From positions 32,922,001-32,986,000 of the forward strand of contig JAQFVV010000002.1 in the NCBI GenBank assembly GCA_028023455.1: a DNA stretch of 64,000 bases. Reading direction: 5' to 3'. Origin of the DNA: Epiperipatus broadwayi. Its lineage: Eukaryota; Animalia; Onychophora. Position 1 is the first letter of the stretch. Every line of letters begins with the position of its first letter. The translations under genes were made by a program, and so were the position numbers. Below, piece by piece: positions 2,285 through 56,881 of the stretch. The notes beneath the pieces were generated by a model, which searched no databases, was not told where the DNA came from, and worked only from the letters and a program-made list of their open reading frames with translations.

Positions 2285-2865
2285 GTAAATAGGCAACTAA
2301 AAAGTAGAAAAATAACAAAGTAATATGTCTCTCAGTTAATTTGCCATTCTTAGAAAATATCAGAGATCTTAAGAATCTATACATGTTATAAAACAATTGG
2401 AAATTGCAGAAATATTGTCATTTCATAAAAGCATTGGAGCCTCAAATAAATCAAAAAGGTCTCAAATGCTTTTATGAAATGACAATATTCCTGCTATTTC
2501 CAATTCTTTTGTAACAAGTCTAGATTTATATATATTGCTTTAACTCCGCTCATTCATATACACTTTAATGCAAATTTTTTTAATGATTTCTTTATTTTCC
2601 TGATAGTTTTGACTGTCCTGCAGTCTTCATCAGAAACTGTCAGGAAAATAAAGAAATCATTAAAACATTTTTTTGCATTAAAGTGTATATGAGGGGAGTT
2701 AAAGCAATATATTTATGAATATATGAAGAAATGCAAAAAAAGTAAAAGGAGAAAAGAAGAATACAAGTCTAGATTCTTAAGATCTCTGATATTTGCCAAG
2801 AATGGCAAATTAACCAAGAGACAGATTATTTTATTTTTCTACTTTTTAGTGGACTATTTATTTAC
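2285..2865. repeat. Nested fold-back: outer inverted repeat enclosing two inner hairpins, one carrying a family A hammerhead
   Basis: Outer arms at about 2285-2380 and 2765-2865 (gttaatttgccattctt / aagaatggcaaattaac). Inner hairpins at about 2380-2520 and 2530-2715. Confidence 0.85.
2600..2640 (-). ncRNA. Family A hammerhead remnant in a hairpin loop (GAAA mutated to AAAA)
   Basis: Minus strand reads CTGATGA a gactg cagga cagtc AAAA. Confidence 0.5.
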
Positions 2866-6779: not shown

Positions 6780-6816
6780 AGCTCTGAAGAAGACTGCAGG
6801 ACAGTCAAAATGTAAG
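6780..6816 (+). ncRNA. Family A hammerhead, degenerate (G12 to A)
   Basis: agct CTGAAGA a gactg cagga cagtc AAAA tgtaag. Confidence 0.5.

Positions 6817-9166: not shown

Positions 9167-9202
<36 letters not shown>
9167..9202 (+). repeat. (AAT)n microsatellite
   Basis: About 12 AAT units directly 5' of the GAA tract. Confidence 0.95.
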
Positions 9203-9203
<1 letters not shown>

Positions 9204-9205
<2 letters not shown>

Positions 9206-10618
9206 GAAGAAGAAGAAGAAGAAGAAGAAGAAGAAGAAGAAGAAGAAGAAGAAGAAGAAGAAGAAGAAGAAGAAGAAGAAGAAGAAGAAGAAGAAGAAGA
9301 AGAAGAAGAAGAAGAAGAAGAAGAAGAAGAAGAAGAAGAAGAAGAAGAAGAAGAAGAAGAAGAAGAAGAAGAAGAAGAAGAAGAAGAAGAAGAAGAAGAA
9401 GAAGAAGAAGAAGAAGAAGAAGAAGAAGAAGAAGAAGAAGAAGAAGAAGAAGAAGAAGAAGAAGAAGAAGAAGAAGAAGAAGAAGAAGAAGAAGAAGAAG
9501 AAGAAGAAGAAGAAGAAGAAGAAGAAGAAGAAGAAGAAGAAGAAGAAGAAGAAGAAGAAGAAGAAGAAGAAGAAGAAGAAGAAGAAGAAGAAGAAGAAGA
9601 AGAAGAAGAAGAAGAAGAAGAAGAAGAAGAAGAAGAAGAAGAAGAAGAAGAAGAAGAAGAAGAAGAAGAAGAAGAAGAAGAAGAAGAAGAAGAAGAAGAA
9701 GAAGAAGAAGAAGAAGAAGAAGAAGAAGAAGAAGAAGAAGAAGAAGAAGAAGAAGAAGAAGAAGAAGAAGAAGAAGAAGAAGAAGAAGAAGAAGAAGAAG
9801 AAGAAGAAGAAGAAGAAGAAGAAGAAGAAGAAGAAGAAGAAGAAGAAGAAGAAGAAGAAGAAGAAGAAGAAGAAGAAGAAGAAGAAGAAGAAGAAGAAGA
9901 AGAAGAAGAAGAAGAAGAAGAAGAAGAAGAAGAAGAAGAAGAAGAAGAAGAAGAAGAAGAAGAAGAAGAAGAAGAAGAAGAAGAAGAAGAAGAAGAAGAA
10001 GAAGAAGAAGAAGAAGAAGAAGAAGAAGAAGAAGAAGAAGAAGAAGAAGAAGAAGAAGAAGAAGAAGAAGAAGAAGAAGAAGAAGAAGAAGAAGAAGAAG
10101 AAGAAGAAGAAGAAGAAGAAGAAGAAGAAGAAGAAGAAGAAGAAGAAGAAGAAGAAGAAGAAGAAGAAGAAGAAGAAGAAGAAGAAGAAGAAGAAGAAGA
10201 AGAAGAAGAAGAAGAAGAAGAAGAAGAAGAAGAAGAAGAAGAAGAAGAAGAAGAAGAAGAAGAAGAAGAAGAAGAAGAAGAAGAAGAAGAAGAAGAAGAA
10301 GAAGAAGAAGAAGAAGAAGAAGAAGAAGAAGAAGAAGAAGAAGAAGAAGAAGAAGAAGAAGAAGAAGAAGAAGAAGAAGAAGAAGAAGAAGAAGAAGAAG
10401 AAGAAGAAGAAGAAGAAGAAGAAGAAGAAGAAGAAGAAGAAGAAGAAGAAGAAGAAGAAGAAGAAGAAGAAGAAGAAGAAGAAGAAGAAGAAGAAGAAGA
10501 AGAAGAAGAAGAAGAAGAAGAAGAAGAAGAAGAAGAAGAAGAAGAAGAAGAAGAAGAAGAAGAAGAAGAAGAAGAAGAAGAAGAAGAAGAAGAAGACAGA
10601 AGAAGAAGAAGAAGAAGA
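9204..10618 (+). repeat. (GAA)n microsatellite, about 1.4 kb (about 470 units)
   Basis: Pure GAA with one GAC interruption at about 10597. Confidence 0.98.
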
Positions 10619-10689: not shown

Positions 10690-10860
10690 TAAATAACTAT
10701 CACACTACCACGTATTCCTTTAAAATCATATGAATAAAGATACAACAAAAGACAAATAACCCCCAAGATGCATTTCATTTTGAATCAACACTCATCAGTT
10801 GGCCCAAGTCACCATTTGTCATATATATCTTTAATGAATTATTTGTTATAGACTTCTTTT
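10690..10860 (-). mobile_element. Family D-related retrozyme-like fragment with hammerhead at 10763-10802
   Basis: Minus strand reads ccaa CTGATGA gtgttg att caaaat GAAA tgca TC ttgg. Stem I is ccaa/ttgg; stem III is the palindrome ATGCAT. Confidence 0.75.
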
Positions 10861-10934
10861 AGATTATAATAATACTGATAATTCTGCTAACAAGCTTGTT
10901 AGAGAAGTTTAATTTTGTTTATAAGTTTATATAC

Positions 10935-10974
10935 GCTAAGCGCTTTTGAAATTCTTAGACTTCATATTCATAGC
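10935..10974 (-). ncRNA. Family E variant hammerhead (A3-U8 core), G12 to A, predicted inactive
   Basis: gct ATGAATA t gaagt ctaaga atttc AAAA gcgc TT agc. Confidence 0.55.
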
Positions 10975-11484
10975 TGAATGCAGTCAATGATAATGAGGAG
11001 GTGTATTGTAATTTATACAAAATAGTTTGCTATTCATTTTGCCATAGGTCATGGCATTTTCTTTGTTTTAATTAATTTGTCCATCTTTTTGAAATGGTGG
11101 AACAAGTGTCCTTCCTTATAGAATTAGTATCGTTATTTATGAAGTTGCCATCGCAACACCTGTATATATATAGAAGAGCATAGAACAATAAAGATACCAC
11201 AACGGCAATTTTAGAATGTGAAAAAACAACTAGGCACAAATTTGAACCTACCAACCCCATAATATTATGTAGAGAAAGAAATGACCATAGGCATAAAATT
11301 AAAGAAGCCTACTTCATAAATAACAATACCATTTCTATAAATAGGAAAAACACCTGTTTCACCATTTCAAAAAGATGGACAAATTAATCAAGACAAAGAA
11401 AACGCCATGACTTATGGTAAAATGAACAGCAAACTAATTTGCATAAATTACAATACTCCTCCTCATAATCATAGACTATACTCA

Positions 11485-11524
11485 GCTATGAATATGAAGT
11501 CTAAGAACTTCAAAAGCGTTTAAC
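11485..11524 (+). ncRNA. Family E variant hammerhead, degenerate
   Basis: gct ATGAATA t gaagt ctaaga acttc AAAA gcgt TT aac, about 95 nt after the endonuclease stop codon. Confidence 0.5.
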
Positions 11525-11594
11525 GTATATAAACTTATAAAATTGCACTTTATGCAAAAAAGTGAAGCTTATTATTATTAGAAAAGAATTATAC

Positions 11595-11637
11595 GGCTGA
11601 GCACTTTCAGAGAACTTAAGTCTCCATATTCATAGCC
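11595..11637 (-). ncRNA. Family E variant hammerhead (A3-U8 core)
   Basis: ggct ATGAATA t ggagac ttaa gttctct GAAA gtgc TC agcc. Confidence 0.7.
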
Positions 11638-12279
11638 TACTTTAAGCGAAGTTTAGCAGTAATTTATGCAGAATTTATGCAAAGTTTTCTTTCATAAAGA
11701 CCATTTTCTGGAGATTGTAAAGCATGATTCTTTTCGGTTTATTACATTGTTGTCATTTGCAATAAAGCATGCCTCCTTAATCTTTCATTTCATATTATGT
11801 TCATTGCACTGTGCCCTTGCCATAATGGGTTCGAACACATGGCCTGTTGTTTTTTGGTGCTCAAAGAATATGGATTTGTTTTCAGTATTACTTAGAGCTT
11901 TCCTGTATAAATAATGATGTTGAAGTGTTCTGGTGATGTTGGCACGGTCGCTCCATAATATGCTGTTCTAGATCCATTGATTGGGCATGAAATTTTATAA
12001 ACTGCTTGGGCTATTTGATCAGAAGATATTTTGTCTTTGGTATTGTTTATCATTCTGTTTGTTGTAGATGGGATGTGGAATCCTAGTTCGAAGGACTCAG
12101 CAAATATTTTATATTTCCTAGCAATTGATGGTATGTAAAGTAGCAGCATTCTTTATTGCAAATGACAACTATGCAATAAACTGAAAAGAATCGTGCTTTA
12201 CATCTCCAGAAAATGGTCTTTATGAAAGAAAACTTTACATAAATTCTGCATAAATTACTGCCACACTTCGCTTAAAGTA

Positions 12280-12322
12280 GGCTATGAATATGGAGACTTA
12301 AGTTCTCTGAAAGCGCTCAGCC
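12280..12322 (+). ncRNA. Family E variant hammerhead (A3-U8 core), most intact copy; predicted cleavage after C12318
   Basis: ggct ATGAATA t ggagac ttaa gttctct GAAA gcgc TC agcc. Stem I ggct/agcc, stem II ggaga/tctct, palindromic AGCGCT stem III. Confidence 0.75.
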
Positions 12323-12934
12323 ATATAATTCTTTTCTAATAATAATAAGCTTCACTTTTTTGCGTAAAGCGCAATTTAAAACTTACCACTCAAAGGTGAA
12401 GTAAAAAACAAGGATTTTATAAACTTATAAACAAAATTAAACTTCTCTAACAAGCATGTTAGTGCAGAATTATTAGTATCATATATATCTTTATTATATG
12501 AAGAGTATTTATCAATAGTAAATTGTTTCATTTTGATTTACAAGTGTCAAACTCGCTCCTCCCACAACTTTGACACCATCCACTTCAGATAAATACAGTA
12601 ATGATTATCATTAATCATTTACTAAACTGGAAATTGTCACTTGTAAATCAAAATGCAACAATTTATACATATTGTGCTATTTCAACCATCTAGTTTTAAT
12701 TCGTAAATACTCTGCGCATTTTGGTGTAGTTGGTAGAGCATTCAACTTGGGGATTTGGAGATTCTAGGACCGATTCTGACCTCACAGGTTTGGTGCTCGA
12801 ACTGCTTATGAATTCCCAAGCTGTAAAGCCACACACCTTTTTTTTTAGTTTGTAAATGTTTTTAGAAAAATTCAAAATTTTATTCAAAACTTTTTAAAAG
12901 CATCCAATTGTTATTAATAATCCATAGGTTACCG

Positions 12935-14748: not shown

Positions 14749-14788
14749 AACTAACAGTTTCGGCTGTCCTGCAGTCATCATCAGAGTT
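14749..14788 (-). ncRNA. Family A minimal hammerhead, intact core
   Basis: aact CTGATGA t gactg cagga cagcc GAAA ctg TT agtt. Stem I is aact/agtt. Confidence 0.65.
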
Positions 14789-14834: not shown

Positions 14835-14873
14835 AGCTCTGATGAGACTGCAGGACAGTCAAAACTGTTAGTT
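14835..14873 (+). ncRNA. Family A hammerhead (G12 to A)
   Basis: agct CTGATGA gactg cagga cagtc AAAA ctg TT agtt. Confidence 0.5.
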
Positions 14874-18193: not shown

Positions 18194-18345
18194 AACATTA
18201 TTAATCGTAAAGACACATGCTTCTCGATATCGAAGAAATGGAGCAACTGACCTTTAACGTTGTATAATTTGCATATAGTCACAGAGGGTTACTTCACTCA
18301 GAGCTATGAAATATGAGAGCACACCTCTCGAAAGTGCTCAGCAGA
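18194..18345 (+). mobile_element. Penelope-like 3' end (subfamily E3) with variant hammerhead at 18303-18342
   Basis: INRKDTCFSISKKWSN* followed about 55 nt later by gct ATGAAATA t gagag cacac ctctc GAAA gtgc TC agc. Confidence 0.75.
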
Positions 18346-34158: not shown

Positions 34159-34197
34159 CCTTACAGTTTCGACTGTCCAGCAGTCTTCATCAGAGCT
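34159..34197 (-). ncRNA. Family A minimal hammerhead with intact core
   Basis: agct CTGATGA a gactg ctgga cagtc GAAA ctg TA agg. Stem I is only 2 bp in this copy. Confidence 0.55.
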
Positions 34198-42793: not shown

Positions 42794-43824
42794 AGATTTG
42801 AAAAGCAGGCATTCTTATACCTGGAACTTAATTGTAAATATAAGGGATTTGAACTCAGACTTTCAAGCAATCTTCAACTATGTACACTAGTGATATACAT
42901 GACCACACACATATAGAAAAGATAAATAATCTTCAATATACGTATTTCATGCTGAACCAGCGCTCATCAGTTGGTCCAGATTATCATCTCCCACACACAC
43001 ACACATATATATATATAATCAGTGCTCAGTTTATATTAAGATAGCAAATCTTTATACCTTAATGGACAGACTTCAATCTACTCCAATCTCCAACTCTTCA
43101 GCCCATCTATACCATTGAAAATCTAATGATAGAAAAGTATAAAGATTTGCTATCTTAATATAAACTGAGCACTGATTATATATGTGTGTGGGAGATGATA
43201 ATCTGGACTAACTGATGAGTGCTGGTTCAGCATGAAATACATCTATTGGTGATTATTTAGCTTTTCTACATGTATGTGGTCATGGGTATCAGTAGTATGA
43301 GATAGTGTACATAGTTGAAGGTTGCTTGAAAGTCCGAGTTCAAATCCCCTATATTTATAATTAGGTTCCAGGTATAAGAATGCCTGTATTTCAAATCTTA
43401 CACATTAAACGTGCATTCTACCCATCTCTCTTCTATGTATTTAAATGAATATTGTCCTATACATGAGGGTCAGAGTGACTTGAGGTCAACATGGACATAG
43501 CAACAATATTGGCATCTGTATGGGGTTTGGGTATTCTATCATCAGATTTTCAATGGTATGGATGGCTGAAGAGTTGGAGGTTGGAGTAGATTGAAGGCCT
43601 GTCCATTAAAGTATAAAGATTTGCTATCTTAATATAAACTGAGCACTGATTATATATATGTGTGGGAGATGATAATCTGGACCAACTGATGAGTCCTGGT
43701 TCAGCATGAATACATATATTTGTGATTATTTATTTTTTCTACATGTGTGTGATCATGTGTGTCAGTAGTATGAAATAGTGTGGATAGTTGAAGGTTGCTT
43801 GAAAGTCTGAATTCAAATCCTCTA
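42794..43824. mobile_element. Family C insertion: inverted unit plus tandem units of about 475 nt, three hammerheads (42934-42974 -, 43207-43250 +, 43681-43725 +)
   Basis: 15-bp TSD tattagatagttata (42779-42793, 43825-43839). CTGATGA at 43212 and about 43686. Confidence 0.9.
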
Positions 43825-47245: not shown

Positions 47246-49295
47246 TCATTTGATTATTACTATTTTATTTTTGTTATGTCATCTCTTGTCTTCTGTCTAA
47301 TGTTAAGGGCTTTGTGCTATAGGTCTATGCATTTTACTATTTCTTTGATCCAGAGATCAAACCTGATGATCTTAGATGTTTTTTAGGTAGCTGAGGATAT
47401 TACATTTTTATATAGCTTGCTCATAACTATCCTAGTGAACAATTCAATATTGATCAGGTATTCTTATCTGAAGGCAAATAACTTGTCTATCTGAATTGGT
47501 GAAATGAATATCAGAATATTTGATTGTAAAGAAAAAAATTTGTAAGATGTCGTTACATTTACGATTAGTAAAAGTGATATTATTTACCTACCAGTAGTTG
47601 CTGAATCCTTCGTTTTTATCTATATATATATATAATACCAAAGAAAGTGATGAAATATATTATTCCCTTTGCTTGTATATGTAATTCTTTAACAATGTAT
47701 GTCTGTACTCATAATGAAATGGTTTCTTTCTTTATATCACCAAGCTGAATACACTTTCGGTGACAAACACCATAATCATTAGCAAAGGAAGTGATGAAAT
47801 AAATGAATAAAGGAATATAATTTAATGAAGATTTAGTAAATAAATTATGGAAGATAATGTGTTAATGGTGGTAAGTTCACATTTGTGATCAGTTTTTGAA
47901 AGAAACTGTTGAAAAGATTGTGACATGAAGAAATGGAAATCACGTAGAATGAATATAGAGAAAACGATAATAATTGCCTTGAAAATATATCAAAGGAACT
48001 AAGTTAGAGCTCGTCAAAAGATTTAGAATCACGGATATCCAACCTATGGCCCAGGATGTTTGTGAATGTGACCAAATGCAAAATTGTAACATTTAAAATA
48101 TTGAGATTTTTTTGTGATTACATGTTGCTATGTGATTAAAATAACCATACGTATGGACGCTAATACAATGTCAAATATCGACTGGCTTTATGTTTCTCTT
48201 TTTTAGTTTTATAGTTAATATATATATAACATTAATAGTGTTTTATTATTTAGATGTATACATTTTCTATGTTAGTGATCACAAATTTGGAGCCTGTTTG
48301 ATTGGGTCACTACATAATTAGGATAATTATTTAAGGACTTTTTTGCTTATCTCTGATGGTGGGTATCACAAAAGTTATGCAGAGACCGGTTTTTATTTTG
48401 TCATCTTTTGGTAATGTTTGTATATTTAATGTGTGACCTGATCCAAAGGTGCCGAAAGGTTGGACACTTGATTTAGCTATTTAGGAAATAGAGAAACAGA
48501 AAGTAATTTGATATAAATAATAAAATTAAATGAGTCTTCTTCAATTTATGGAACACAATTACTAAAAGAGATTACAATAAGGCAAGGATTGTAAAGATAC
48601 TGATATGGAATATGAAATAATTGAATGGTATTATTACGTGAGAGTTCATAAGGAGTTTGAACTCAGGAATAGAATCTATCTAATGATCTTACATTCCAGA
48701 GTCTGATACTCTATTGCTGCCCTAAACCACGCAGAGTAATATGGATGATAATGTTATATGATATAAATTATGAATCAGAAGAAGAACATAGGTACTTATA
48801 ATTAAGATAAAAATGGTGGAATGTATGAATAGAAGAACTATTAGAAATAGTAATTCTCATATTTTGTGGAAAAGATCTGATAATAGTCTCTAAGGGTACC
48901 ATAAAGATAAAAGAAAGGGGGCAAAGGCTCACAAAGAATAGAGCAGAAAATTAAAATATAGAATTAAATGCATGTTCTTTTTTTACTTGTTTTTTATATT
49001 TGTGGCTGCTGAAGTTGTTAAGAGAGATGCCTCTAATGAACTGGAGATTGTGTTGTTTGGAACAAGACTGTCAATTCTTTATTTTCTTATAGGATACTAT
49101 AATGAGGGGTGTGGTGTTATGTGTTAATATTATATTTAATCGTTGGTTTGGTCCAAAGCATTCCACTTTCCCTTAAGTGGTTTATTGCAATGATAATCAA
49201 ATTCTGAAGCTATCCTCTTTGGATCGTTTCTATTTTGGCATTTCTGGTCCCTGAATCTTTTGTGCTGAGCAATAAAGGTGCTCAATTATTATTTG

Positions 49296-56789: not shown

Positions 56790-56881
56790 GCGTTGATGGC
56801 CTAGTGGTTAGTATAGCTGCCTTTCAAGCAGCTGGCCTGGGTTCGTTTCCCGGTCAACGCATTTGACATATGAAAAAAAAA
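56790..56881 (+). mobile_element. tRNA-Gly(TCC)-derived short SINE or tRNA pseudogene, anticodon loop CT-TTC-AA
   Basis: GCGTTGA TG GCCT AGTGGTTA GTAT A GCTGC CTTTCAA GCAGC TGGC CTGGG TTCGTTT CCCGG TCAACGC A, with the same tgacatatg(A)n tail as the other two copies. Confidence 0.75.

What the first reader, a model, noticed from the sequence alone, without database searches (positions are those of the whole stretch)
12280..12322. Non-canonical hammerhead ribozyme (A3-U8 core swap plus extra U) in three Penelope-like subfamilies
Seen: five motifs (10935-10974 -, 11485-11524 +, 11595-11637 -, 12280-12322 +, 18303-18342 +) share the layout stem I - ATGAATA-t - stem II - (G/A)AAA - GCGC-type tetramer - TH - stem I. 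Stem II differs among subfamilies (ggaga/tctct, gaagt/acttc, gagag/ctctc) but always pairs. Each motif lies 55-100 nt behind the stop of a GIY-YIG C-terminus (INRKxxCFxISxxW). Established: PLE pseudo-LTRs carry minimal type-I hammerheads at this position; C3-G8 is a tertiary Watson-Crick pair that tolerates compensatory swaps in vitro; an extra nucleotide between A9 and 10.1 occurs in some natural hammerheads such as CChMVd(+). Inference: AUGAAUA is CUGANGA with C3 to A and G8 to U, a natural variant that CUGANGA-based searches would miss. 12280 and 11595 keep G12; the two E2 copies have G12 to A and should be inactive; 18303 has one additional A in the core. I cannot verify whether this variant has already been reported.
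Basis: partly seen in the sequence, partly recalled or inferred. Interest (0 to 1): 0.9.

Follow-up and report, generated by a model that had tools for sequence, protein, structure and literature searches.

The report
Penelope hammerhead motif with A3-U8 core
The five motifs are real copies of the small dimer-type hammerhead ribozyme motif that Penelope-like retrotransposons carry behind their endonuclease gene, in a high-copy lineage whose core C3-G8 pair is replaced by A3-U8; this extends a published kind of core covariation, and whether it still cuts RNA is untested.

Summary
All five motifs lie at the stated coordinates, and a sixth, decayed copy lies at 47734-47792(-). Each follows a GIY-YIG C-terminus by 52-97 nt.

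Genome-wide, AUGANUA joined to this family's 3' half occurs 13,849 times. CUGANGA with the same 3' half occurs 10 times. Stems I and II covary. Position 7 is free (A, U, G or C, by subfamily), while positions 3-6, 8 and 9 are fixed, as in the hammerhead core.

Distant Penelope relatives on other organisms' contigs carry the same minimal hammerhead at the same place, with C3-G8 or U3-A8. The 3-8 pair therefore covaries across lineages. The same genome also holds at least 32,000 canonical CUGANGA Penelope-type hammerheads.

- The "extra U" is not new. [quoted passage not shown]
- G12A in the two E2 copies is copy-level CpG decay, not a family trait.

A natural U3-A8 core is published. I found no report of a natural A3-U8 core in the open library. 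Cleavage is untested: no raw RNA reads were available, and the window's copies are dead remnants.

This scan has noted the same variant many times elsewhere in this genome, and earlier follow-ups reached the same verdict. I class it as a new variant of a known kind, of moderate interest.

The parts
12280..12322 (+). Hammerhead motif, best-kept copy in the window. Layout: stem I GGCU/AGCC; core A3 U4 G5 A6 A7 U8 A9 plus a bulged U; stem II GGAGA/UCUCU; G12 A13 A14; A15.1-GCGC-U16.1; C17 = 12318, the predicted cleavage site.
   Evidence: 69 bits, E 2.4e-13. The monomer minimum-free-energy fold is the three-way junction.
12150..12279 (+). Short arm of a head-to-head insertion, heavily 5'-truncated. 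It holds only the last ~130 nt of the element, with the GIY-YIG C-terminus broken by a stop and a frameshift.
   Evidence: (three-frame translation).
11595..11637 (-). Hammerhead motif, inverted partner of 12280. Loop III has decayed from GCGC to GUGC. C17 is at 11599.
   Evidence: 67 bits.
11638..12149 (-). Decayed 3' part of the Penelope-like ORF: GIY-YIG region (..VYKISCPINGSRTAYYGAT..) and C-terminus INRKESCFTISRKWSL*, whose stop ends 54 nt before the motif.
   Evidence: (ORF 11892-12149, minus strand).
10935..10974 (-). Hammerhead motif of the E2 subfamily, stem II GAAGU/AUUUC. G12 has become A through CpG decay.
   Evidence: 57.1 bits.
11072..11260 (-). Remnant of the GIY-YIG C-terminus (..IRKDTCSTISKRWTN*) belonging to the 10935 copy. 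The stop ends 97 nt before the motif.
11485..11524 (+). Hammerhead motif of the E2 subfamily, inverted partner of 10935. It carries G12A, loop III GCGU, and a broken stem I 3' strand (AAC instead of AGC).
   Evidence: 52.1 bits.
11337..11387 (+). C-terminus INRKNTCFTISKRWTN* of the 11485 copy. The stop ends 97 nt before the motif.
18303..18342 (+). Hammerhead motif of a third subfamily, stem II GAGAG/CUCUC. It has a private one-base insertion in the core (AUGAAAUA) and loop III GUGC.
   Evidence: 46.7 bits. A sibling copy of the same subfamily elsewhere in the genome lacks the insertion (C1:13773394).
18200..18250 (+). C-terminus INRKDTCFSISKKWSN* of the 18303 copy. The stop ends 52 nt before the motif.
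47734..47792 (-). Sixth copy, decayed: GCU-a-AUGAUUA-U-GGUG..CACC-GAAA-GUGUAU-UC-AGC.
   Evidence: (18.3 bits, E 0.13).

Best explanation
These are copies of the minimal type-I hammerhead motif that Penelope-like retroelements (PLEs) carry 50-100 nt behind their RT plus GIY-YIG ORF. They belong to a large lineage of this genome in which the tertiary Watson-Crick pair C3-G8 of the catalytic core is replaced by A3-U8, so the core reads AUGANUA.

Shown:
- The motif has a three-way junction with covarying stems I and II.
- Helix III is a single A15.1-U16.1 pair closed by the palindrome GCGC.
- A bulged U follows A9, and all other catalytic letters are kept (U4 G5 A6 A9 G12 A13 A14 H17).

Inferred:
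- In transcripts of master elements, two motifs pair through the AGCGCU palindrome to build a full helix III. The resulting double hammerhead cuts after H17 (C12318 in this copy), probably slowly and helped by the element's protein, as in other PLEs.

The six window copies are dead remnants of 5'-truncated insertions, two of them head-to-head pairs. Only 12280 still has every consensus letter. My odds are about 0.95 that this is the PLE hammerhead motif with an inherited A3-U8 core, and about 0.6 that the core is catalytically competent.
For: Enrichment:
- The window has 4 pattern matches against 0.01 expected.
- The genome has 11,080 matches against 120 for the control.

Core census:
- A sample anchored only on the 3' half (9,119 hits) reads GCU-AUGANUA-U in about 82 of the 100 rows listed. 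The rest are incomplete motifs or differ by a single base, and none is C3+G8.
- AUGANUA with this 3' half occurs 13,849 times. CUGANGA with the same 3' half occurs 10 times.
- N7 is U in 5,192 copies and G or C in 742, varying by subfamily, while positions 3, 4, 5, 6, 8 and 9 stay fixed.

Structure, on 78 distinct copies:
- Stem II is 88% paired, and 4 of its 5 pairs show changes on both sides.
- The covariation score is 0.288 against 0.174 for shuffles (0 of 500 shuffles reach it) and at most 0.161 when the partners are slid.
- The fourth pair of stem I reads GC 29, AU 16, CG 7.
- RNAalifold finds stem II on its own.

Element context:
[quoted passage not shown] It ends in INRRDTCFDISKRWTI about 75 nt before the motif.
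- The window copies have the same C-terminus.

Relatives:
- Contigs encoding the nearest PLE proteins (22-27% identity) carry the same minimal hammerhead with C3-G8 (L213 twice, L215) or U3-A8 (L212 twice, L216, L217).

Literature:
- The nucleotide between 9 and 10.1, the palindromic loop III, nearby opposite-strand pairs and a U3-A8 covariation are published PLE hammerhead traits (PMC4209133).
- U3-A8 also occurs elsewhere in nature (PMC3088659).
- In an Anolis PLE hammerhead, C3G and G8C each abolish cleavage and the double mutant partly restores it (PMC11167929).
Against: - No cleavage evidence exists. Only assembled contigs of two small runs were available, and they cannot show RNA ends.
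- A3-U8 is invariant inside this lineage. The covariation rests on comparison with other lineages, not on changes within the family.
- Conservation among thousands of copies mostly reflects copying from master elements, not selection on each copy.
- The monomer fold is no more stable than shuffled sequence (z 0.23). RNAalifold does not recover stem I and prefers a competing GC/GC hairpin.
- G10.1-C11.1 is G.U in 44 of the 78 copies.
- The bulged U could pair with G12 or A12 and lengthen stem II, which would take G12 out of the core.
- Published PLE hammerheads cut very poorly in vitro, and cleavage was not needed for insertion in vitro (PMC6765202; PMC11167929).
- No Rfam hammerhead model matches, even at E<=10.
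Confidence: 0.8

Rival explanations
1. The motif descends from a hammerhead but no longer cuts. Master elements keep it for another reason: as a 3'-UTR structure recognised by the element's RT/EN protein, as an RNA dimerisation signal through the palindromes, or by hitch-hiking.
For: - PLE hammerhead cleavage was dispensable for insertion in vitro, and no RNA-seq ends were seen at the cut site in Anolis (PMC11167929).
- Whole PLE clades thrive without hammerheads (PMC8557442).
- The monomer is thermodynamically unremarkable.
- G10.1.U11.1 wobbles are common.
- The U after A9 can pair with position 12.
- Loop II of the 12280 family (CUUAAG) is itself palindromic, and cofolding prefers a dimer through stem II.
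Against: - Every residue needed for catalysis is kept across dozens of subfamilies whose stems, loops and flanks have diverged, while N7, the one core position that is free in active hammerheads, is the one that varies.
- A purely structural role would not demand G5, A6, G12, A13, A14 and a non-G at position 17.
- The 3-8 change is to the isosteric Watson-Crick pair, not to a mismatch.
Confidence: 0.17
2. The resemblance to a hammerhead is coincidental. The conserved block would then be a DNA-level or protein-level signal of the transposon, such as an endonuclease or integration site, or a different RNA class.
For: - No Rfam family matches.
- The letters C3 and G8, which define the canonical core, are absent.
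Against: - Compensatory changes in two helices show selection at the RNA level.
- The layout matches the published PLE hammerhead feature by feature.
- Related PLEs have canonical or U3-A8 hammerheads at the same place.
Confidence: 0.03

Closest known systems
Minimal hammerheads of Penelope-like elements (min-HHR; Cervera & de la Peña 2014, PMC4209133; Lünse, Weinberg & Breaker 2017, which I could not read)
   Same: - Type-I topology, placed in the pseudo-LTR / 3' region behind the RT plus GIY-YIG ORF.
- A one-pair helix III closed by a palindromic loop, expected to work as a dimer.
- An extra nucleotide between A9 and 10.1.
- Many subfamilies per genome with compensatory stem changes.
- Frequent opposite-strand pairs a few hundred bp apart.
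   Different: The core reads AUGANUA instead of CUGANGA. G10.1-C11.1 is often G.U.
U3-A8 core variant of Schistosoma mansoni Cercyon PLE hammerheads (about 1,300 hits, PMC4209133) and of other natural hammerheads (Perreault et al. 2011, PMC3088659)
   Same: The Watson-Crick pair at positions 3-8 is swapped in a natural, high-copy PLE hammerhead lineage that standard descriptors miss. I found the U3-A8 form again in relatives L212 and L216/L217.
   Different: Here the purine is at position 3 and the pyrimidine at position 8 (A-U, not U-A), so position 8 is a pyrimidine. I found no published natural case in the open library.
Engineered 3-8 swaps: Przybilski & Hammann 2007 and Nelson & Uhlenbeck 2008 (known to me only from citations and memory, not read here); C3G/G8C in the Anolis Poseidon hammerhead (PMC11167929)
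   Same: Single changes at position 3 or 8 abolish cleavage. Restoring a Watson-Crick pair partly rescues it.
   Different: Those are laboratory mutants with reduced rates. This is a natural lineage of about 14,000 or more copies, and its activity is unmeasured.
Canonical PLE-type hammerheads of the same genome (CUGANGA-A-GA..UC-GAAA)
   Same: Same architecture and the same habit of inverted pairs. They are present in this window at 2607, 6784, 14758, 14839 and 34167.
   Different: They have a C3-G8 core, a bulged A rather than U, and a different stem I and loop III. There are 32,422 copies against a control of 103. They provide an in-genome positive control for assays.

Membership tests
Hammerhead ribozyme | Three helices around a junction, supported by covariation | tested here: met
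   Stem II is 88% paired and 4 of its 5 pairs change on both sides. The fourth pair of stem I reads GC/AU/CG. No shuffle of 500 reaches the observed score. Helix III is reduced to A15.1-U16.1 plus a palindromic loop.
Hammerhead ribozyme | Conserved core letters U4 G5 A6 A9, G12 A13 A14, A15.1-U16.1 and H17, with N7 free | tested here: met
   N7 is A, U, G or C by subfamily. H17 is U or C. G12 is the family state, and A12 copies are CpG decay.
Hammerhead ribozyme | C3 and G8 as written in the consensus CUGANGA | tested here: not met
   The core has A3 and U8 in 13,849 copies, against 10 with C3/G8 on the same 3' half. The Watson-Crick character of the pair is kept. Relatives have C-G or U-A.
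Hammerhead ribozyme | Site-specific self-cleavage after position 17 | not testable with these tools
   No raw RNA reads were available. Contigs cannot show RNA ends.
Hammerhead ribozyme | Match to the Rfam hammerhead covariance models | tested here: not met
   There is no hammerhead hit at gathering score on the whole window, or at E<=10 on 10800-12500. The models do not cover forms with a one-pair helix III.
PLE minimal hammerhead (min-HHR) | Location behind the ORF or in the pseudo-LTR of a Penelope-like element | tested here: met
   The motif lies 52-97 nt behind the GIY-YIG C-terminus in the window, and about 75 nt behind an intact 675-aa ORF in L031.
PLE minimal hammerhead (min-HHR) | [quoted passage not shown] | tested here: met
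   The extra nucleotide is U in 87 of 89 extracted copies. It is published as a conserved trait.
PLE minimal hammerhead (min-HHR) | Palindromic loop III / 15.2-16.2 that allows a dimeric helix III | tested here: met
   A-GCGC-U is self-complementary over 6 nt. Decay gives GUGC. Cofolding of the E2 copies pairs exactly this segment between the two strands.
PLE minimal hammerhead (min-HHR) | Highly conserved G10.1-C11.1 | tested here: inconclusive
   The pair reads G-C in 28, G.U in 44 and A-U in 4 of 78 copies. Part of this is CpG decay of C11.1-G12, and part is a family-level G.U, as in the 12280 family.
Penelope-like element | RT with the DKG motif plus a C-terminal GIY-YIG endonuclease; inverted, 5'-truncated insertion structures | tested here: met
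   RVT_1 scores E 3e-9. The ORF aligns over RT and GIY-YIG with a PLE-type protein (27% identity, E 2e-44), including KEDKGN and the GIY-YIG block. Head-to-head pairs occur in the window and in L031. Pfam's GIY-YIG model itself did not hit.

The most novel reading that the evidence does not exclude
The AUGANUA core is a catalytically active natural hammerhead with A3-U8, the third Watson-Crick combination seen in nature at positions 3-8 and the first with a pyrimidine at position 8. An entire multi-family PLE clade has fixed it, alongside canonical C3-G8 PLE hammerheads in the same genome. If so, descriptor-based censuses undercount hammerheads, and the genome offers a natural matched pair for asking what the 3-8 base identities contribute to catalysis.
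Probability: 0.55. Interest if true: 0.55.

Novelty: new variant of a known kind. Interest (0 to 1): 0.45.

Why it matters
Searches for hammerheads use CUGANGA descriptors or Rfam models, and both miss this lineage of about 14,000 or more copies in one genome. Counts of ribozyme-bearing retroelements are therefore too low.

If the core is active, it would show that the base at position 8, whose ribose 2'-OH is held to be the general acid, need not be a purine in nature. It would also complete the picture begun with the natural U3-A8 variants.

The gain is incremental. The ribozyme class, its host element, its dimer architecture, the extra nucleotide after A9 and the principle of 3-8 covariation are all published.

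Tried and rejected
- **Rfam.** No hammerhead family matched at gathering score or at E<=10.
- **Metagenome scan.** The 3' half plus either core gave 120 loci. All were chance hits without a paired stem II.
- **RNA evidence.** Only two small runs of coded organisms hold parts of the stretch, and they are kept as contigs. Depth peaks over 12277-12327, but no RNA ends can be read. This says nothing about cleavage.
- **Covariance model R1 on the whole genome.** Only 150 candidates were scored, so it gave no census.
- **Generic pattern ATGANTANGN{8,26}CGAAA.** Its reversed control was itself very frequent (26,859), so the excess cannot be used. I did not pursue single-mutant counts in this form.
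- **Alternative core registers.** Taking the C of stem I as C3 breaks G5 and A6, so I rejected it.
- **The bulged U pairing with G12 or A12, as a longer stem II.** This is possible on paper in all subfamilies. I did not favour it, because the same bulge is standard in canonical PLE hammerheads and A12 proved to be CpG decay.
- **Papers not held.** Lünse et al. 2017, Przybilski & Hammann 2007 and Nelson & Uhlenbeck 2008 could not be read. A prior report of A3-U8 there cannot be excluded.
- **Further genome loci.** I therefore could not compare the proteins of the canonical and A3-U8 PLE lineages.
- **Species.** I did not try to name it.

Full report
**1. Observation**

The five motifs are at the stated places and align over the whole motif. 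The 12280 copy reads, in hammerhead numbering:
- stem I: GGCU
- core: A3 U4 G5 A6 A7 U8 A9, followed by a bulged U
- stem II: GGAGA, loop CUUAAGU, UCUCU
- G12 A13 A14
- A15.1, loop GCGC, U16.1
- C17 (= 12318)
- stem I return strand: AGCC

The pattern ATGAATAT-N(10-30)-RAAAGYGYTYA has 4 window matches against 0.01 expected. The fifth copy (18303) has a one-base insertion in the core.

A covariance model built from 78 genomic copies scores the five at 46.7-69 bits. It adds a decayed sixth copy at 47734-47792(-).

GIY-YIG C-termini of the form INRKxxCFxISxxW* end 52-97 nt before four of the motifs. The 12280 copy has the same C-terminus broken by a stop and a frameshift.

The copies form two head-to-head inverted pairs and one single copy. 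This is the insertion structure described for Penelope-like elements (PLEs) (PMC8557442; PMC4209133).

**2. Genome-wide picture**

The window's genome has 5.6 Gb.

- **Unbiased core sample.** To see the 5' core without bias, I anchored a search on the 3' half alone (GCU...RAAAGYGCUUAGC), which gave 9,119 hits. About 82 of the 100 rows listed read GCU-AUGANUA-U. The rest are incomplete motifs or differ by a single base. None has C3 together with G8.
- **Counts on the same 3' half.** AUGANUA occurs 13,849 times and CUGANGA 10 times.
- **Position 7.** It is U in 5,192 copies and G or C in 742, each state belonging to distinct subfamilies with their own stem II. Positions 3, 4, 5, 6, 8 and 9 do not change between subfamilies. 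This is the conservation pattern of the hammerhead core, with A and U in place of C3 and G8.

**3. Structure**

On 78 distinct copies (alignment A2) I counted pairs for the hammerhead structure:
- Stem II is 88% paired, and 4 of its 5 pairs have changes on both sides (GC, AU and UA types).
- The fourth pair of stem I reads GC 29, AU 16, CG 7.
- The covariation score is 0.288, against 0.174 in shuffles (0 of 500 reach it) and at most 0.161 when the partners are slid.

RNAalifold recovers stem II independently but not stem I. The monomer's minimum-free-energy fold is the three-way junction, but it is no more stable than shuffled sequence (z 0.23). That is expected for a hammerhead whose helix III is a single pair.

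The segment A-GCGC-U is self-complementary. Cofolding of the E2 copies pairs exactly this segment between two strands, which is the dimer mode proposed for PLE hammerheads.

**4. Host element**

A locus with a motif of the commonest subfamily holds a 675-aa ORF (L031:4148-6175) next to an inverted sister copy. The ORF has:
- RVT_1 (E 3e-9)
- the PLE signature KEDKGN
- a C-terminal GIY-YIG block

It aligns over 603 residues with a PLE-type protein (27% identity, E 2e-44). The motif starts about 75 nt after its stop codon. An open ORF in this locus suggests a fairly recent insertion.

**5. Relatives**

The nearest proteins in the large protein database are only 22-27% identical. Their contigs carry the same minimal hammerhead, with a bulge after A9 and a short palindromic loop III:

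| Locus | 3-8 pair | Note |
|---|---|---|
| L213 | C3-G8 | twice, in both flanking repeats |
| L215 | C3-G8 | |
| L212 | U3-A8 | twice |
| L216, L217 | U3-A8 | |

Across PLE lineages the 3-8 position is therefore C-G, U-A or, here, A-U. It is always a Watson-Crick pair.

The same genome also holds canonical PLE-type hammerheads in large numbers: CUGANGA-A-GA..UC-GAAA occurs 32,422 times against a control of 103. Five of them are in this window. The A3-U8 state is thus a lineage trait, not a property of the genome.

**6. Details of the window copies**

- **G12A in the E2 copies.** This is copy-level decay. Among the first 100 of 267 E2 copies, I counted by eye 53 that keep C11.1-G12, 25 that read CA and 22 that read TG. 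These are the two products of CpG deamination, in similar numbers.
- **The extra A at 18303.** It is private to that copy. A sibling of the same subfamily has the normal core.
- **Other decay.** The 11595 and 18303 copies have loop III GUGC. The 11485 copy has also lost part of stem I.
- **Overall.** Only 12280 keeps all consensus letters, and it belongs to an arm that holds only about 130 nt of the element. The window therefore contains dead remnants. Any function belongs to the master elements.

**7. What is known**

Cervera & de la Peña 2014 (PMC4209133) describe PLE minimal hammerheads with:
- G10.1-C11.1
- a palindromic loop III
- activity as dimers
- nearby opposite-strand pairs
- a U3-A8 core covariation in Schistosoma Cercyon elements (about 1,300 hits)

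Other relevant reports:
- Perreault et al. 2011 report natural U3-A8 cores (PMC3088659).
- In an Anolis PLE hammerhead, C3G and G8C each abolish cleavage and the double mutant partly restores it. Cleavage there needs the element's protein and is not required for insertion in vitro (PMC11167929).
- Reviews note very low in vitro rates for PLE hammerheads (PMC6765202).
- Full-text searches for a natural A3-U8 hammerhead, or for the AUGAAUA core, found nothing.
- Lünse et al. 2017 and the primary 3-8 mutant papers are not held, so a prior report cannot be excluded.

The A3-U8 pair is, as far as I could check.

**8. Mechanism and rivals**

My best reading has two parts.
- **Shown:** this is the PLE hammerhead motif with an inherited A3-U8 core.
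- **Inferred:** two motifs pair through AGCGCU and cut after H17, slowly and probably with help from the element's protein.

The main rival (0.17) is a hammerhead-derived structure that no longer cuts and is kept for protein binding or dimerisation. For it:
- cleavage is dispensable for insertion in vitro
- the monomer is weakly stable
- G.U at 10.1-11.1 is frequent

Against it, every catalytic letter is retained across diverged subfamilies, and N7 is the only free core position. A coincidental or DNA-level signal is close to excluded by the compensatory changes.

**9. Earlier notes of this scan**

The same variant has been noted many times elsewhere in this genome: 176 notes hold the search words. 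The follow-ups shown reached the same verdict. My tests were run independently and agree. They add four points:
- the C-G and U-A states in relatives on other organisms' contigs
- the free N7
- the CpG explanation of A12
- the coexistence with at least 32,000 canonical PLE hammerheads

**10. Verdict**

The feature is real and correctly interpreted. It is a new variant of a known kind, and its activity is untested. Interest is moderate (0.45).

Noticed in passing
window 2607-2633(-), 6784-6810(+), 14758-14784(-), 14839-14864(+), 34167-34193(-): These are canonical C3-G8 PLE-type minimal hammerhead motifs (CUGAUGA-A-GACUGC..GACAGUC-GAAA), mostly decayed, and one pair is inverted 55 bp apart. Genome-wide, CTGANGAAGA..TCGAAA occurs 32,422 times against a control of 103.
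   Followed up: partly
window 10773, 16502, 32950, 33590, 42945, 43212, 52124, 53500, 63858 (each about 26 nt): A second canonical family..CUGGaCCAA-CUGAUGAG-UGCUGG-UU-CAGCA-U-GAAA.., occurs at nine places. These include the inverted and tandem units at 42794-43824 that another first-reader note calls retrozyme-type. No Rfam hammerhead model hits them, even at E<=10. I did not work out stem III or the cleavage site.
   Followed up: partly
window about 9200-10600: A simple (AAG)n / (GAA)n repeat about 1.4 kb long reads as poly-K / poly-E ORFs. It lies directly upstream of the Penelope remnants.
   Followed up: no
window 56790-56861 (+): A tRNA gene scores 48.2 bits against Rfam RF00005.
   Followed up: no
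L212 (11-60 and 2977-3026), L216 (about 335), L217 (about 812): Metagenome contigs encoding distant PLE relatives carry U3-A8 minimal hammerheads (UUGAAAA and UUGAGAA cores). In L212 they sit in both flanking repeats of a 3-kb element.
   Followed up: partly
Some unrelated high-copy repeat must contain it.
   Followed up: no
window 12292-12308: Loop II of the 12280/11595 subfamily contains the palindrome CUUAAG. Cofolding predicts a dimer through stem II (-29.2 against 2 x -8.8 kcal/mol). This would compete with, or add to, dimerisation through loop III.
   Followed up: no
G000:C2:16828963-16829005 and C2:9577272-9577315: At these places two 3' halves of the motif meet head to head with no 5' core (GCUAAGCGCUUUC..GAAAGCGCUUAGC). 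They look like extremely truncated inverted insertions.
   Followed up: no
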